DNA of 63,555 bases, filler included, from Octopus bimaculoides (lineage: Eukaryota), in assembly GCF_001194135.2 (NCBI RefSeq). It is 8 parts of 7 records of this genome, joined end to end, with 100 filler letters (N's around TTAATTAATTAA, not from the genome) between each part and the next. Parts side by side here need not be neighbours in the genome. Positions count along the whole stretch, not along the records: positions 50,501 to 54,100 come from NC_068994.1; 7 more parts are not named here. One strand, 5' to 3'. A program made the position numbers and the translations under genes. Each line of letters opens with the position of its first letter. Positions within the stretch are counted from its first letter, which is position 1. The notes beneath the pieces are model-generated. The model was not told the origin of the DNA. It was given only the letters and a program-made list of their open reading frames with translations, and did not search any database. Below are positions 9,206 through 54,100 of this stretch, in pieces.

Positions 9206-10380
9206 TTTTATTATTGATAATGAACATTTTCTAAAATGTAATATAAAAAAGATTTGGAGTCACGAAAGATGAATATTTTATGAAGGAAGATTTTACATTT
9301 TGAACTTGTTTCATATTTTTGATCACACCCACCTACCCACCCCACCTCAACTTAAATAGTATTTTCGAGTTCTGTCAAACAACCCGATATACCAGATAGA
9401 TCACCTGCAAGTTGATGTTAATAAAATTCTTCAGAAATATGTTTGCATATTTAAACAAATTTTCAATATAATGTGTTTGTGTGGACACGAACAAACGAAA
9501 TTTGCTTGTAATCAAGAGTTTTAACTCAGCTACTATATAAATTAAAATTTAGGGAATGGAGCAGATAAAATCCAGGCTACATATGTTTTCTGTCTAGCAG
9601 AACCTCGGAAGTAGTTGTTATTCAACAAGGGGTACTCCACTAGCTCGTCATCAGGCCGAAGATACCTTAGTTGAATAGAGGTTACATTGTCAAGGGATCC
9701 CACGTTAACTCGTAGCAGATTTGATCGAAAATGAATGGAAATCACTGAGTGAGAGAACAAAAGAAGAACAACAGATGGTTAGTAGCTAAAGGAGTGGGGT
9801 AGTTGTAAGTGGTTTTGGTTGAAGAGGAGTTTGAGAAAATAGGAAAAAATACAACTTGTGTGGATGGGGAGGCTGTGAAGGAGGTAGGATATGGTGGGTA
9901 AGAGGAATGTGTAAAGGTAAGGACTAATTTAGTAGAAAGGGTGGTATTAGTGGAGGAGCTAAGTTGCTAGGTCGACCTAGTTGTACCTTAAGGTTAATCA
10001 TAATTAAGAATAATCAGAGTTAAGGGATTACACAGGTTTAATGAAATGGGCAAACAATGAGTAGGACCTGTGTTAACTAGAGAGTACTACATCTGAGAAT
10101 TTATTAAGTAATAAAGGTTTGTGCTTCTGGAAGATGGTTAGCTATTTCCTTAAACGCGATTTATAAATGCCAAGGTTAGTGTTGTAAGTGGGGAGCCAGA
10201 ACTTGACTGACACGTTATTATACCAACCCAAGTAATTAATCAATCCCGGAATGATGAAAGACAGCAGAATTGAAATGTTTCTAAGATACGCGCCAATCTT
10301 ATGGGCAGTGTATCAATCGATTTTATCTATTCTAGTAATAGATTGGTATTCAAATATGTAACATAACCGATACCTTAGAG

Positions 10381-10637
10381 TACTGGTTCTGAAAAGTGTG
10401 CCATGGATTTTTGAAAACCTGTAATAATACTCGCACATCATGAAAAACGTGCTGTTCATAATTTTTATTGTACATTGACAAGGATGATTAATAAAATAAT
10501 GTGATCAATAGTTATTTTTATTTTATTTTCCAAATCTAAAAAAAAAATTGCTTTAAAACCGTCCATGTAAATTGCATCAGTAATATTTAGTTTTTATCTC
10601 CGGTGCGCCACGAAGCCGAGAAGACTGGGAACTACTG
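10381..10637. mobile_element. Decayed hAT-type MITE
   Basis: Termini TACTGGTTCTGAAAAGTGTG...GACTGGGAACTACTG resemble CAGTGGTTC/GAACCACTG. Flanks CCTTAGAG and CCTGAGCG match at 6/8 positions as an 8-bp TSD. Confidence 0.45.
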
Positions 10638-49160: not shown

Positions 49161-50932
49161 TGCTAAAATAAGAATACTATCATACATACATACATACATA
49201 CATATGTGTGTGTGTGTGCCAGATAAACCGGGAAACCGGCCGCATGCTTCTTTCTATGTAATGAGGACTAATATAGTGTAAACATTAGGTTAACAAACAT
49301 CTTTGCATACAAAAAGGTCAAAGGCTGCCATTGAGACTCGAACCCGTATCAACTTTATACATGACAAGTCACCAACAATATTCTTTTATAGAATATTTAT
49401 TTATTTGAAGTTTCGGTTCATCCCTGTCTCAGTTGTCCATTCTGTTTCCTGATATTTCTCTTTAAAATGAATATTTTTACTTTACATATTTGCTGGCAAA
49501 ATGCATGTCCCGAGAATTTAGATTACGTAGTGTTGATGGTTTACACAACAGTTTCAGGAAAATAGTCCTAAAAAGACTGAAAGCTCCGGAAAATTCTGGT
49601 AACGAAGGTCCAGGCGAATGCGGGAATGAACGATGAGAAACGTTACTAAATTCGGGGGTATTAATCTGTCGATAAGCTGCGTATATGTATGTATCTATGC
49701 ATGTATGTATGTATGTATGTATGTATGTATGTATGTATGTATGTATGTGTGTGTGTATGTATGCATGTTGGTATATATGCATATGTTGGTATGTATATAA
49801 ATGTTGGTATGTATATATGTTGGTATGCATATATATGTTGGTATGTATATATATGTTGATATGTATATGTACACATGCGCACACACACTCATATGTTGAA
49901 TTCTTCTTGTATTTTGTTTGTCCTACCCTTGATTTATCCATGCAACATATGTATATATGTTTATCTATATATTTATATATATGTACGTATATGTATGTAT
50001 GTATGTATGTATGTATATATCTATCTATCTATCTATCTATATATATATATATATAATGCATTTAAGAATAATGTGTATACAAGATATCTATGTATGTCTA
50101 TGTATATCACACACATGTATGTATACATATGTATTTGTGAACATACGTACACACCCATACCTAAACAGCAGCCCATATATAATATACACCAATCACATTT
50201 GCAATCCGTCATTCATGCAAGCAGTTGCGGGTGTAAAATATGAATGTGAAACATCTTGAACAAATATATTTTAATGTGATGTTAAAATGTCGTGTTATCT
50301 TGATATATAAATAGAAACCTATGAAATAAATGAATTTATGTACTAATGAATGAATGTATGTGGTATATACGAATATATATATATATATATATATATATAT
50401 NNNNNNNNNNNNNNNNNNNNNNNNNNNNNNNNNNNNNNNNNNNNTTAATTAATTAANNNNNNNNNNNNNNNNNNNNNNNNNNNNNNNNNNNNNNNNNNNN
50501 TCTTCACTTGATCTCCCGTCTTTAATCCTTTCCTTTCAGATGCTTTCCCTCTCTCTTCATTGCTGGTTCCACTTATCGTTGCCTTATATTATATTTACCT
50601 TTTAGCTTACTTCGTATGTATGTATGTATGTATGTCTATGTAATAATACAAATGATATGTAAGCATATGCATGTATACATACATATATGTACATACCTAC
50701 AACTACATGTATATATAGATGCATATCCGGGTACAGGACGTTAGAAAAATGAACGGGGACATAAAAACAAAAACGGACTTTGTTTACAGACAACAGAACG
50801 AACACATAGGAAAACAAACAAGCCACTTATGGAATTATTCCTTCATCAGCTGCCTCTATTCTAAAACTATGCGTTTCGAAGATAAGGCAGGACGCATGCA
50901 TGTCTAAGTATGTATGTATGTATGTATGTATG

Positions 50933-50964
<32 letters not shown>

Positions 50965-51609
50965 CCCCCTCTCTCTCTCGTTCTCCCCTCCCGCAATCAG
51001 AAAAGATTATATACACAGTTATTCTTTTACCTTACTTTTCATGCTTCACTAACCCCACGTGGCGGTGGAGATGCTATTGCTCCTAGTTGAACATCAATGG
51101 ATAGAGAGCAACTCTCACAAAAACATTAAAAAAAAAGAAAAAGAAAGGGAAATGGTTTCAGAGAATTGAGAATTAATATCACAAAATTAATTTACGGAAT
51201 TTTGAGGGAAATCGGATGCTTATTTTCCAAGCAAAGAAACAACGAAGAACCTGTTCCGGTCTTCATAGACCTTATCAGCTTAGCACCATTTATTCGAGTC
51301 TGCTTAGATAAACCGACAAAGGATTTTACATGTGGAAGAAGGGATACGAAGGGTTTGGTTCAGTAGTAATTTGCATAATTAAGAAAGGAAATGAACTTGC
51401 TTTTCGTTATTCGTTTTCTTTCTTCAATTAATTGAAAATCGTTTTTTTTTTTTGCGTACTTCATTCAGTACATCTTTATGTAATGTACTTATCTAAACTT
51501 ACGGTATTCATCTTCAGGAGTAAATTTTCCTTAAATCAATTTATTCTTTCATTAGGCAAATAATTATTTTCGATATATTTTCTGTGCTATGTTGATGAGG
51601 GAATTTAAT

Positions 51610-51875
51610 GACGGAATTTGAACTCAGAACGTAAATCTGGAAGAAATGCCAGTAAGCATTTTGTCCGGCGCAACAACAATTCCACCAGCTCGCCGCTTTA
51701 CAACACTGTATAATAATAATTATTAATAATTCTTGGAATTCTGCCGAGGTTGGCTTAGCTCTTCATCCTTTTGGAGTCGATAAAATACGTACCAGTTGAA
51801 CACTGAGGTCGACTTAATTGACTTTGCCTCTTCCCCGAAATTGCAGGCATTGTACCAAAATTTGAAACCAATAAT
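51610..51875. mobile_element. Two SINE family A fragments in opposite orientation
   Basis: GGAATTTGAACTCAGAACG (-) at 51612-51700; GCTCTTCATCCTTTTGGAGTCGATAAAATACGTACC (+) at 51735-51875. Confidence 0.65.
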
Positions 51876-52648
51876 AATTCTTGGAAGTTATCTCCCATTT
51901 TCATTCAGAGTTACTAAGAAACATCGCTAGGTTGTTGTTTTCTCCCTCCAAATAACAGGGGCAATTTTAGTTTATTGTTGATAATTTTTGCGCACATCAT
52001 TCAGTACATCAGCTCTTAATTTATTATTCCAGACTATAATCATTATCGCATACAATGAACGGAGAAAGCTCGTTTTCCTCACGTCTCCCCCACCCCAAGT
52101 AGCTCCACATACCAATGATTTAATCAGCACTTGATTTCAAGATAAAGTAAATGGCGAAATGGCAAAGGTGACTTAACAGCTCCAGTTTATTCTTAAATGC
52201 AATATTAGAGACACATGTGAAATGACCCGAAAAAAAAATAAGGAAAACGTAGCTGCTATCACAAATCCAAATGCGTCTCGCTTTATAGGAAGCTAAATCC
52301 TTATTCTAAACTATAATATATTCTTTACAGACGTACAATAACTGGGAATTCGAAAATTTAGAAAGAAACAGATTACATGATGTTCATTCTTTTCTCAAAT
52401 ATGTCAGTAATGCCAAATAAAATACATCGAATAATCGGAAATAGAAACAAGACTGTAATATCGGCTCATTGAGTTTTTTGCTTCTACAAAACGCCTCGAA
52501 CATTATTAAATATTCTGTCAAACTTTAATATTCGAATAAACAATTGCAAGGCATTCTTTGTGGTCCTCGTACCCTGCCTTCATCTTCTTTCCTCTTTCTC
52601 TTCCGTTTTTTTCCTGTATTTCTCTCCCTATCTATTTCTTTGCCTATC

Positions 52649-52699
<51 letters not shown>

Positions 52700-53095
52700 G
52701 AATGTCCGTCTGTCTGTCTGTATGTATGCCTGTCTGTCTGTCCGTGTACCAGTTCATTCAGTCATCTAACTCAATTCTTATGAACCTACCATCTGTTTCT
52801 CTTTCATCAAGTATGTTTGTCAAGAGAGGGCTTCAAACGAACCAGAACAAACACACATATGCACGCACACACACAATAAAGGAAGAAAAAAATGAGTGTG
52901 GGTGGGAGACAGAAATAATAGGAGGAGTGAGAGAGAGAGAAAGAGTTAATGAAATAGTGCAAGAGAGTGACAGAAATGATTTAGACAATTGTTACTGATT
53001 TGAAGCCAAAACAGAAAAAAGAAAACATCAAAATATCTAAAACCCGCCAATCTGATGAAATTACCCATTTAATATTATTATAATTATAATTATTA

Positions 53096-53159
<64 letters not shown>

Positions 53160-53227
53160 CATCATTATTATTATTATTATTTTATTTCTTTCATATCAGT
53201 TTATCGTAATCTTATCTGAAAGACGAT

Positions 53228-53708
53228 ATGCAAATCAGTCACAGCGGCATCCCAGTACCAGTTCCTCTACCAGTATGGTACTATAGTCAATGCATCCGAT
53301 TTCCGGGTACGTCAATACACCCTGCTTTCACTCGGGCTCTTTTACCTGTACCAAACGCTCAAGGTGCATCTTTACGTCTTTCGCCATCGATAAGCGAAAC
53401 GTCGCCGACAAACCATGTCTTGTCATCGGCAAGTCCGGACGCTAATTCTTTATGGCATCACGAATCGTCGAAACCGAAGAAGAACTCTTTCTCGATCGAT
53501 GCCATATTAAACAGAGATTCCTGTAAATCCGAAGAGATTTCTCCGAGGGGAGAGAGCATGACAGAAGCGGCAACTTGTTTGGCGGCCACAGAGAAGAGGC
53601 GGCAGCGATTGTACAACACAAGTCATCCGTATATTTCGACAACGTATTCAACAAATATCCATTATCAAAACCACCATCAGTACCAAGTGTGTCAAGACTC
53701 AAAGACTG
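53228..53708 (+). CDS. First (or 5') coding exon of an eh1-containing transcriptional repressor, probably a homeobox or other developmental TF; partial gene
   Basis: 160 stop-free codons of balanced, CpG-containing, non-repeat sequence; Pro/Ser-rich N-terminus; eh1 motif FSIDAIL at 53489-53509; ends at a strong donor CTG|GTGAGT (phase 1). A polypyrimidine/CAG acceptor lies at 53199. No DNA-binding domain was found in the window. Confidence 0.7.
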
Positions 53709-53769
53709 GTGAGTAAATGAACCATTATTTTAAGTATTAAACTGTTTATATGTTGTTGTTGTTGTGTGT

Positions 53770-54100
53770 TGTGGAGGCGCAATGGCCCAGTCGTTAGGGC
53801 AGCGGACTCGTGGTCATAGGATCACGGTTTCGATTCCCAGACCGGCCGTTGTGAGTGTTTATTGAGCGAAAACACCTAAAGCTCCACGAGGCTCCGGCAG
53901 GGGATGGTGGTGAACCCTGCTGTACTCTTTCACCACAACTTTCTCTCACTCTTACTTCCTGTTTCTGTTGTGCCTGTAATTCAAAGGGTCAGCCTTGTCA
54001 CACTGTGTCACGCTGAATATCCCCGAGAACTACGTTAAGGGTACACGTGTCTGTGGAGTGCTCAGCCACTTGCACGTTAATTTCTCGAGCAGGCTGTTCC
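53770..54100 (+). mobile_element. SINE family D, truncated by gap
   Basis: Near-identical to 22850-23235. Confidence 0.85.

What the first reader, a model, noticed from the sequence alone, without database searches (positions are those of the whole stretch)
53228..53714. Isolated eh1-bearing exon: 5' coding exon of a Groucho-recruiting developmental transcription factor
Seen: the only non-repeat, balanced-composition ORF in 63 kb, with KKNSFSIDAIL and a GTGAGT donor in phase 1. Established: FxIxxIL (eh1) recruits Groucho/TLE and typically lies N-terminal to the homeodomain in NK-like, engrailed and goosecoid classes; it also occurs in some Fox, T-box and zinc-finger factors. Inference: the window is the regulatory desert and intron of such a gene, with the DNA-binding exon beyond 63555 or in a gap. 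This gives the unique non-coding islands here enhancer potential.
Basis: partly seen in the sequence, partly recalled or inferred. Interest (0 to 1): 0.7.

Follow-up and report, generated by a model that had tools for sequence, protein, structure and literature searches.

The report
First exon of octopus Not homeobox gene
This stretch is the genuine first coding exon of an octopus copy of the well-known Not/Noto developmental homeobox gene, carrying its conserved Groucho-type repressor motif; it is a correct but ordinary gene annotation, not a new kind of element.

Summary
Window 53228-53716 (+) is a 162-codon ORF containing KKNSFSIDAIL, and it runs into a CTG|GTGAGT donor after base 53708, in phase 1. 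It is real coding sequence. The ATG, the reading frame and the donor are conserved in Argonauta hians, in a second more distant cephalopod contig (probably decapodiform) and in Octopus vulgaris. Against O. vulgaris, dN/dS is 0.15. DNA similarity to Argonauta starts about 9 nt before the ATG and stops at the donor.

The O. vulgaris orthologue is 316 aa and 96% identical over this exon. After a 47.3 kb intron it continues into a homeodomain. That homeodomain carries the Not/Noto signature (QQYMVGTER; E19, G28, E30). Its best matches include the experimentally named Not proteins of sea urchin, Platynereis, Halocynthia and Xenopus. Cephalopod transcript contigs from four sequencing runs join exon 1 to the homeodomain exon at the same phase-1 position.

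The eh1 core (F88, I90, I93, L94) is invariant in 14 Not orthologues across Bilateria. Groucho binding is inferred, not shown. The suggested enhancer potential of the flanks finds no support in this piece. Interest is low, because this is a known gene family with a gene model already present in a sister species.

The parts
53228..53708 (+). Coding part of exon 1 of a Not/Noto-family homeobox gene (160 codons plus the first base of codon 161)
   Evidence: ORF. It is 96% identical in protein to residues 1-160 of the O. vulgaris 316-aa homeodomain protein P0003, with orthologous exons in Argonauta (L001) and a second cephalopod contig (L002). dN/dS against O. vulgaris is 0.15. Differences from Argonauta by codon position are 33/24/93.
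53228..53230 (+). Start codon
   Evidence: An in-frame TAA lies at 53207-53209. The same ATG is conserved in Argonauta, L002, O. vulgaris and the transcript contig L004, where it is the first in-frame ATG. Cross-species similarity begins about 9 nt upstream of it.
53276..53284 (+). Block W17-Y18-Y19 (W-P-F in bivalves), N-terminal conserved block 1
   Evidence: Alignment A3; invariant in the three cephalopods of A1.
53318..53329 (+). HPAF block (H31-F34), conserved in Not orthologues of molluscs, annelid, nemertean and brachiopod; FPAF in Xenopus
   Evidence: Alignment A3; P32 is invariant in 14 of 14 sequences.
53489..53509 (+). eh1 (Engrailed homology 1) core FSIDAIL, the presumed Groucho/TLE-binding motif
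   Evidence: It matches the consensus [FY]x[IVM]xx[IL][IVLM] quoted in bioRxiv 10.1101/2023.03.14.532566. F88, I90, I93 and L94 are invariant in 14 Not orthologues. 110 of 118 relatives have such a motif N-terminal to the homeodomain.
53597..53635 (+). Block R124-I136 (RRQRLYNTSHPYI), the family block RR.(Q/H)RL...HPY between eh1 and the homeodomain
   Evidence: Alignments A1 and A3. P134 is invariant in 14 of 14. The block is also present in the exon-1-only hits P0005-P0008.
53709..53714 (+). 5' splice donor GTGAGT of intron 1 (phase 1)
   Evidence: A GT donor sits at the homologous codon position in Argonauta (GGG|GTGAGT), L002 (ATG|GTAAGT) and O. vulgaris (identical over 19 nt). The O. vulgaris acceptor ...ttgcag|CG gives G+CG = Ala, as in the annotated protein. 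Transcript L004 switches to exon 2 at the same point.
53069..53186 (.). (TTA)n microsatellite, about 40 copies, ending 42 nt upstream of the ATG. It lies in the putative 5' UTR or promoter region and is not part of the coding feature.
   Evidence: Tandem Repeats Finder. Window 53105-53227 aligns to the O. vulgaris locus at 120 of 123 identical.
53771..54100 (.). Dispersed Octopus repeat(s) inside intron 1, beginning 63 nt after the donor
   Evidence: 8 copies or fragments occur elsewhere in the 74 kb O. vulgaris locus, but none at the orthologous position, where collinear alignment ends at window 53772. None occur in Argonauta or L002. ARAGORN finds no intact tRNA.

Best explanation
Window 53228-53708 (+) is the first coding exon of the octopus orthologue of the Not/Noto homeobox gene (ANTP class, NK-like subclass). 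It encodes the N-terminal 160 residues of a protein of about 316 aa. That region carries an eh1 motif (FSIDAIL) flanked by three further family-conserved blocks (WYY, HPAF, RRQRL...HPY). Transcription reads through the ATG at 53228. The exon is spliced at CTG|GTGAGT (phase 1), across an intron of roughly 47 kb in O. vulgaris, to two exons that encode the homeodomain. By inference, the protein binds DNA through that homeodomain and represses target genes by docking the Groucho/TLE co-repressor on the eh1 motif, as established for other eh1-bearing NK-like factors. Shown here: coding status, exon boundaries, splice phase, orthology and family assignment, and conservation of the motif. Inferred: Groucho binding, repressor activity, and a developmental role in octopus.
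For: The ORF, motif and donor are present. Orthologous exons in Argonauta hians and a second cephalopod contig share the ATG, the frame and a GT donor at the same codon position. Purifying selection is clear. Against O. vulgaris there are 20 nt differences (6/2/12 by codon position), with dN 0.019, dS 0.129 and omega 0.15. Against Argonauta, pN is 0.17 while pS is 0.80, i.e. saturated. DNA similarity to Argonauta is confined to the span from the ATG to the donor, and blastn finds nothing else conserved in the piece. A profile search of 1.84 billion representatives returns an O. vulgaris 316-aa protein matching positions 1-161 (E = 1.3e-87), with a Pfam Homeodomain at residues 208-264 (E = 6.6e-21). 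Its gene has exon 1, then a 47.3 kb intron, then the acceptor ttgcag|CG, consistent with phase 1. Transcript-like contigs from four sequencing runs (L004-L007) encode exon 1 fused to the homeodomain, with the junction at the homologous base. For family assignment, the hits include Not proteins named from experimental work in Strongylocentrotus, Hemicentrotus, Platynereis, Halocynthia and Xenopus. Homeodomain-only scores are 88-98 bits against these, versus at most 55 bits against any homeodomain class in the PDB at the same database size. 117 of 118 retrieved relatives share QQYM[VI]G and E19/G28/E30 with the octopus homeodomain; the E19/G28/E30 combination is reported for Noto (and Vax) in bioRxiv 10.1101/2023.03.14.532566. 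The N-terminal blocks in the window exon align with those of Not proteins from bivalves, a nemertean, Platynereis and Lingula, and the eh1 core is invariant in 14 of 14. The role of eh1 as a Groucho/TLE docking motif in NKL homeodomain proteins is from PMC4901127.
Against: The homeodomain exons are not in the window, so the link between this exon and a homeodomain rests on the O. vulgaris gene model and on transcripts from other cephalopods, not on RNA from the window's own species. True Emx and Vax sequences, the classes nearest to Not, were not available as outgroups, so no formal phylogeny was made. No experiment shows Groucho binding for any cephalopod or, in the papers read here, for any Not protein. 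The cephalopod homeodomain has M at position 56 where 115 of 118 relatives have W, a lineage-specific departure of unknown effect.
Confidence: 0.93

Rival explanations
1. The exon belongs to a different eh1-bearing NK-like homeobox family closest to Not (Vax or Emx), or to a cephalopod-specific NKL paralogue, rather than to Not itself.
For: Emx, Vax and Noto form one clade, and Vax shares the E19/G28/E30 pattern (bioRxiv 10.1101/2023.03.14.532566). Automated names among the hits include EMX1-like, EMX2 and VAX2-like. No outgroup phylogeny was run.
Against: Every inspected hit that carries an Emx, Vax or BarH name has the same QQYMVG.ER / RIKWRK homeodomain as the experimentally named Not proteins. 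117 of 118 relatives form one homogeneous signature group. The pre-homeodomain blocks HPAF and RR..RL...HPY are shared with Platynereis Noto and with bivalve, brachiopod and nemertean orthologues. Only one such gene per cephalopod was recovered.
Confidence: 0.04
2. The ORF is a decaying relic, either a pseudogenised first exon or an exon no longer spliced to a homeodomain in this species.
For: The homeodomain exons cannot be seen in the window. The Argonauta annotation is a partial, exon-1-only model. A repeat has inserted 63 nt downstream of the donor.
Against: The frame is intact over 160 codons, omega is 0.15 against O. vulgaris, and the donor plus the following 13 nt are identical to O. 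vulgaris. The start codon and all family blocks are intact.
Confidence: 0.02
3. It is a chance ORF or a transposon-derived ORF.
For: ORFs of this length arise by chance in about 0.2-1% of random 3.6 kb sequences, and the surrounding sequence is repeat-rich.
Against: There is no Pfam or transposon match. The locus is single-copy and orthologous in three other cephalopods, with a codon-position-biased substitution pattern. It is part of an annotated homeodomain protein.
Confidence: 0.01

Closest known systems
Not/Noto homeobox family (Xenopus Xnot/noto, zebrafish floating head, sea-urchin SpNot/HpNot, Platynereis noto, Halocynthia Hr-Not); ANTP class, NKL subclass
   Same: The orthologue's homeodomain is 46-50 of 60 identical to these proteins and has the same QQYMVG(T/S)ER and E19/G28/E30 signature. 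It has an eh1 motif of the form SF(S/T)I(D/E)AIL N-terminal to the homeodomain. It shares the HPAF and HPY blocks with protostome Not proteins.
   Different: The cephalopod proteins have M instead of W at homeodomain position 56, and KMRKQQQEA instead of KWRKQ.LEQQ after helix 3. They have a longer Ser/Pro-rich spacer before eh1 and cephalopod-specific blocks (PVPLPVWYY, QVCQDSK). Intron 1 is very long, at 47 kb. Nothing is known here about expression or function in a cephalopod.
Octopus vulgaris protein P0003 (GCA_951406725.2, chromosome OX597827.1), deposited under the name 'serine/threonine-protein kinase dyrk1'
   Same: The same gene in a sister species. It is 96% identical in protein over exon 1, and 95.8% identical in nucleotides over window 53105-53772, with an identical donor.
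   Different: 7 amino-acid differences in exon 1. The deposited name is wrong: the protein has a homeodomain and no kinase domain. The window carries a repeat insertion in intron 1 and an upstream stretch of about 1.95 kb that are absent from the O. vulgaris locus.
eh1/Groucho-interaction motif of Engrailed, Goosecoid, Nkx and other NKL or PRD-like homeodomain proteins
   Same: It has the seven-residue core with F at position 1 and aliphatic residues at 3, 6 and 7. It lies N-terminal to the homeodomain and is deeply conserved.
   Different: Binding to Groucho/TLE has not been shown for this protein. In this protein the motif sits about 85 residues from the N-terminus.

Membership tests
Not/Noto homeobox family (ANTP class, NKL) | Homeodomain with the family signature (QQYMVG.ER in loop/helix 2; E19, G28, E30) | tested here: met
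   Tested on the O. vulgaris orthologue P0003, because the homeodomain exons lie outside the window. It has E19, G28, E30 and QQYMVGTER, a signature shared by 117 of 118 retrieved relatives. The diagnostic residues are from bioRxiv 10.1101/2023.03.14.532566.
Not/Noto homeobox family (ANTP class, NKL) | Closest similarity to experimentally named Not proteins rather than to other homeodomain classes | tested here: met
   Homeodomain-only phmmer scores are 88-98 bits against SpNot, HpNot, Platynereis noto, Hr-Not and Xenopus noto. The best scores for other classes in the PDB (En, Gbx, Gsx, BarH, Nkx2, Msx, Dlx, Tlx, Hox, Prd) are at most 55 bits at the same Z.
Not/Noto homeobox family (ANTP class, NKL) | Separation from the sister classes Emx and Vax in a phylogeny with authentic outgroups | not tested
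   No authentic Emx or Vax sequence was returned by any tool. Hits named Emx or Vax by pipelines all carry the Not signature. E19 argues against Emx, where residue 19 is uncharged according to the preprint.
Not/Noto homeobox family (ANTP class, NKL) | Sequence blocks outside the homeodomain shared with orthologues (encoded by the window exon itself) | tested here: met
   HPAF, SF(S/T)IDAIL and RR..RL...HPY align between the window exon and Not proteins of bivalves, Lineus, Platynereis and Lingula. The exon-only profile retrieves those bivalve-type N-termini at E = 5e-5 to 7e-4.
Not/Noto homeobox family (ANTP class, NKL) | Conserved linkage with NK-cluster genes including Emx and Vax (as on one oyster scaffold, PMC7566022) | not tested
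   Only 3.6 kb of the window and 74 kb of O. vulgaris were examined, and no neighbouring homeobox gene was seen.
eh1 Groucho/TLE-interaction motif | Match to the consensus [FY]x[IVM]xx[IL][IVLM] | tested here: met
   FSIDAIL at residues 88-94; the consensus is as quoted. A match alone is weak evidence, since such a pattern is expected by chance in a few per cent of proteins of this length.
eh1 Groucho/TLE-interaction motif | Position N-terminal to the DNA-binding domain and conservation among orthologues | tested here: met
   It lies 120 residues upstream of the homeodomain in P0003. The core is invariant in 14 of 14 orthologues, and 110 of 118 relatives have the motif.
eh1 Groucho/TLE-interaction motif | Physical binding to the WD40 domain of Groucho/TLE, and eh1-dependent repression | not testable with these tools
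   This needs a binding or reporter assay. The general mechanism is from PMC4901127.
Protein-coding first exon | Conserved start codon closed upstream, conserved donor, and splice phase matching cDNA | tested here: met
   TAA at 53207-53209. ATG and donor conserved in four lineages. Phase 1 confirmed by the O. vulgaris acceptor and by transcript L004.
Protein-coding first exon | Transcription and splicing in the window's own species | not testable with these tools
   No RNA data for the source species were available. An exact-sequence protein was not in the 5.8-billion-protein collection.

The most novel reading that the evidence does not exclude
The window exon shows that Not proteins carry two further deeply conserved short linear motifs besides eh1. 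One is HPAF near the N-terminus. The other is RR.(Q/H)RL...HPY between eh1 and the homeodomain, possibly a degenerate hexapeptide-like, cofactor-binding element. I did not find either described in the papers read. Together with the cephalopod-specific W56M change after the recognition helix, they could mark partner interactions of Not that are not yet characterised, and that have been modified in cephalopods.
Probability: 0.15. Interest if true: 0.35.

Novelty: new member of a known kind. Interest (0 to 1): 0.15.

Why it matters
It gives a correct name and exon structure to a cephalopod developmental regulator. In the public records this gene is either mis-named (a 'dyrk1 kinase' in O. vulgaris) or truncated (an exon-1-only 'hypothetical protein' in Argonauta). 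Not/Noto marks axial midline mesoderm in chordates and the annelid axochord, so a properly annotated octopus orthologue is a usable probe for comparative work on midline and mesoderm patterning in molluscs. Beyond that it is routine annotation. No new mechanism or element class is involved.

Tried and rejected
- Pfam scan of the exon peptide alone: no family at E up to 10, as expected for a disordered N-terminal region with short motifs.
- Regex search for a homeodomain (WFQNRR-type) in six frames of the Argonauta flank (3.7 kb downstream) and the L002 flank (10 kb downstream): none found. The intron is longer than the flanks held.
- blastn for conserved non-coding elements between the piece and Argonauta or L002: only the exon aligns, so the enhancer idea has no support in this piece.
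- ARAGORN on the piece, to test whether the downstream repeat has an intact tRNA-like head: none found.
- Rfam scan at permissive E-value: only sub-threshold mir-297, mir-466 and mir-3149 hits (27-42 bits against gathering scores of 85-100), on TG/TA-rich low-complexity sequence at 50604-50960. These were rejected as compositional.
- dS against Argonauta and L002 could not be estimated because synonymous sites are saturated (pS 0.80-0.84). The O. vulgaris pair was used instead.
- The octopus genome paper (PMC4795812) is not held, so I could not check whether Not was listed in its homeobox catalogue.
- The notochord review PMC13327544 contains no statement on eh1 or repression by Noto, and the EH1 survey PMC1310626 does not mention Noto by name in its text.
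- Minus-strand ORFs overlapping the exon (86 and 53 aa) were not pursued. All the conservation and codon-position evidence is in the plus-strand frame.

Full report
**1. Observation**

The genuine piece (50501-54100) contains one outstanding ORF: plus strand, ATG 53228 to TAA 53714-53716, 162 aa. The next longest is 98 aa and lies in microsatellite-derived sequence. KKNSFSIDAIL is residues 84-94, and the core FSIDAIL is encoded at 53489-53509.

The sequence around the end of the ORF reads ...AAG ACT G|GTGAGTAA. GC is 45-49% over the ORF against 15-38% just upstream. An in-frame TAA at 53207-53209 closes the frame upstream.

An ORF this long appeared in 3 of 2000 shuffles of the piece and in 19 of 2000 random sequences with the exon's own composition. 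That is unusual but not proof on its own.

**2. It is a real, constrained coding exon**

A search of 5.8 billion proteins found two relatives. One is a partial 'hypothetical protein' of Argonauta hians (P0001, 61% identity). The other is an unnamed ORF on an ENA contig (P0002, 44% identity). Both ORFs end where the window ORF ends.

At DNA level all three loci have a consensus GT donor at the same codon position: CTG|GTGAGT, GGG|GTGAGT and ATG|GTAAGT.

In the window/Argonauta DNA alignment, similarity starts about 9 nt before the ATG and ends at GTGAGTA. The flanks do not align, and blastn finds nothing else in the piece conserved with Argonauta or L002.

Substitutions are concentrated at third codon positions:
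- Window against Argonauta: 33/24/93 differences by codon position over 158 codons, with pN 0.17 and pS 0.80.
- Window against O. vulgaris: 20 differences (6/2/12), with dN 0.019, dS 0.129 and omega 0.15.

The peptide matches no Pfam family, and none of its homologues is a transposon protein.

**3. What the exon belongs to**

A profile of the three cephalopod peptides was searched against 1.84 billion representatives. It returned an O. vulgaris protein of 316 aa (P0003) matching profile positions 1-161 at E = 1.3e-87. It continues ...QVCQDSKT-AEEDSLSG... into a Pfam Homeodomain at residues 208-264 (E = 6.6e-21).

The gene on chromosome OX597827.1 (L003) has this structure:

| Feature | L003 coordinates | Boundary detail |
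|---|---|---|
| Exon 1 | 10001-10481 | Donor and the following 19 nt identical to the window |
| Intron 1 | 47,273 bp | — |
| Exon 2 | starts 57755 | Acceptor tttctttgcag\|CG |
| Intron 2 | — | Donor AG\|GTACGT, within the codon for homeodomain residue R31 |
| Exon 3 | starts 59654 | — |

G from exon 1 plus CG gives GCG (Ala), the residue annotated after ...SKT. That independently confirms phase 1.

A second relative (P0009, 428 aa) sits on contigs of 2.2-3.7 kb assembled from four sequencing runs (L004-L007). These carry exon 1 and the homeodomain contiguously, which is what spliced transcripts would look like. L004 aligns to the genomic contig L002 from 19 nt before the ATG up to the codon before the donor. 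It then continues with ...K-V-S-V-E-E-S..., the junction codon being G|TC, again phase 1 at the homologous base. In L004 the homologous ATG is the first in-frame ATG.

**4. Family assignment**

Searching with P0003 gave 672 hits at E ≤ 1e-5. Among the best 120 are proteins whose names derive from experimental work: Not of Strongylocentrotus purpuratus and Hemicentrotus, 'Notochord homeobox' of Platynereis dumerilii, Not of Halocynthia roretzi and noto of Xenopus tropicalis. There are also many 'not2' and 'notochord' predictions.

With the homeodomain alone as query:
- The named Not proteins score 88-98 bits.
- The best homeodomain of any other class in the PDB scores 55 bits, at the same database size. 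The classes covered are Engrailed, Gbx, Gsx, BarH, Nkx2, Msx, Dlx, Tlx, Hox and Paired-type.
- Identity to the named Not homeodomains is 46-50 of 60.

117 of 118 retrieved relatives share QQYM[VI]G and acidic-19/G28/acidic-30 with the octopus homeodomain. A preprint on ANTP homeodomains lists G28 for Vax, Emx and Noto, and two acidic residues at 19 and 30 only for Gbx, Noto and Vax (bioRxiv 10.1101/2023.03.14.532566).

Hits that pipelines had named Emx, Vax, BarH, Bsx and so on all carry the Not signature.

The window exon itself also carries orthology evidence. In an alignment of 14 proteins (A3), its blocks W17YY, H31PAF, S87FSIDAIL and R124..RL...HPY135 align with those of Not proteins from four bivalves, Lineus, Platynereis and Lingula. 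F88, I90, I93, L94, P32 and P134 are invariant.

I did not have authentic Emx or Vax sequences, so no outgroup phylogeny was run. This is the main untested point, and I give the rival 'other NKL family' about 4%.

Noto is a recognised mollusc homeobox family; it is listed on the NK-linked oyster scaffold in PMC7566022.

**5. Mechanism**

Shown:
- The exon encodes the N-terminal, non-DNA-binding half of a homeodomain protein.
- Its most constrained element is an eh1 motif matching [FY]x[IVM]xx[IL][IVLM].

From established knowledge: eh1 motifs lie N-terminal in many NKL families and bind the WD40 domain of Groucho/TLE to confer repression (PMC4901127).

Inferred: octopus Not binds DNA through the homeodomain encoded about 47 kb downstream and represses targets by recruiting Groucho through FSIDAIL. 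Neither binding nor repression can be tested here.

**6. Comparison, novelty and verdict**

This is an orthologue of a known gene family, and the same gene already has a model in O. vulgaris, though under a wrong product name. Its secondary suggestion about enhancers has no support in this piece.

Cephalopod-specific details are minor: M56 in place of the near-universal W56, a very long first intron, and extra conserved N-terminal blocks. Interest is low (0.15), and the novelty class is 'new member of a known kind'.

The most novel reading not excluded is that the HPAF and RR..RL...HPY blocks are uncharacterised partner-binding motifs of Not proteins (probability about 0.15).

Noticed in passing
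L003 10001-63797 (O. vulgaris OX597827.1), protein P0003: The O. vulgaris orthologue is deposited in NCBI and UniRef as 'serine/threonine-protein kinase dyrk1'. Its only Pfam domain is a homeodomain. This is a clear product-name error.
   Followed up: yes
L001 10001-10534 (Argonauta hians BAAFZT010000287.1): The Argonauta gene model is partial and covers exon 1 only. It starts at an upstream ATG (MKDD-MQIS...), and the window has CTG at that codon. The shared ATG (window 53228) is therefore the more likely start.
   Followed up: partly
Homeodomain position 56 of P0003 and P0009 (exon 3, outside the window): Both cephalopod Not proteins have Met at homeodomain position 56 (RIKMRK). 115 of 118 relatives have Trp (RIKWRK). 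The sequence after helix 3 also differs (QQQEA against .LEQQ).
   Followed up: partly
window 53069-53186: A (TTA)n microsatellite of about 40 copies ends 42 nt upstream of the start codon. The orthologous O. vulgaris region aligns at 120 of 123 over window 53105-53227. It lies in the presumed 5' UTR or core promoter region.
   Followed up: partly
window 53771-54100: Dispersed repeat sequence, apparently two elements (53771-53934 and 53967-54100), begins 63 nt into intron 1. There are 8 copies or fragments elsewhere in the 74 kb O. vulgaris locus but none at the orthologous site, and none in Argonauta or L002. This looks like a recent insertion specific to Octopus. ARAGORN finds no intact tRNA.
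   Followed up: partly
window 50692-52645: About 1.95 kb upstream of the exon has no counterpart in O. vulgaris: collinear matches jump from L003 8811 to 9000. The stretch contains fragments of another dispersed repeat (window about 51738-51890, with 15 matches in L003). This is an insertion or deletion difference between the two octopus species.
   Followed up: partly
window 50604-50960: Sub-threshold Rfam hits to mir-297, mir-466 and mir-3149 occur on both strands (27-42 bits against gathering scores of 85-100). They coincide with (GTAT)n and (TCTA)n-type low-complexity sequence and are almost certainly compositional.
   Followed up: yes
L003 57983/57984 and 59653/59654: The homeodomain of octopus Not is split by a phase-2 intron inside the codon for residue R31 (AG|GTACGT ... 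aacag|G). I did not compare this intron position with Not genes of other phyla.
   Followed up: no
Proteins P0013-P0126: Automated product names for what are evidently Not orthologues are very inconsistent across NCBI records (MOX-1/2-like, HEX/pha-2-like, Hox-A1/B3/B4-like, Pitx2-like, BarH-like, Nkx-6.1-like, vent1-like, EMX-like and others), although all carry the Not homeodomain signature. P0010 (Willisornis) contains two Not-type homeodomains, which points to a fused model or a tandem pair.
   Followed up: partly
L004 1-397 (cephalopod transcript contig): The 5' leader of the transcript is open in frame for 96 codons upstream of the conserved ATG, but it contains no in-frame ATG. The gene caller started at a GTG, so P0009's first 96 residues are probably translated 5' UTR. 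An out-of-frame ATG lies at about position 226.
   Followed up: partly
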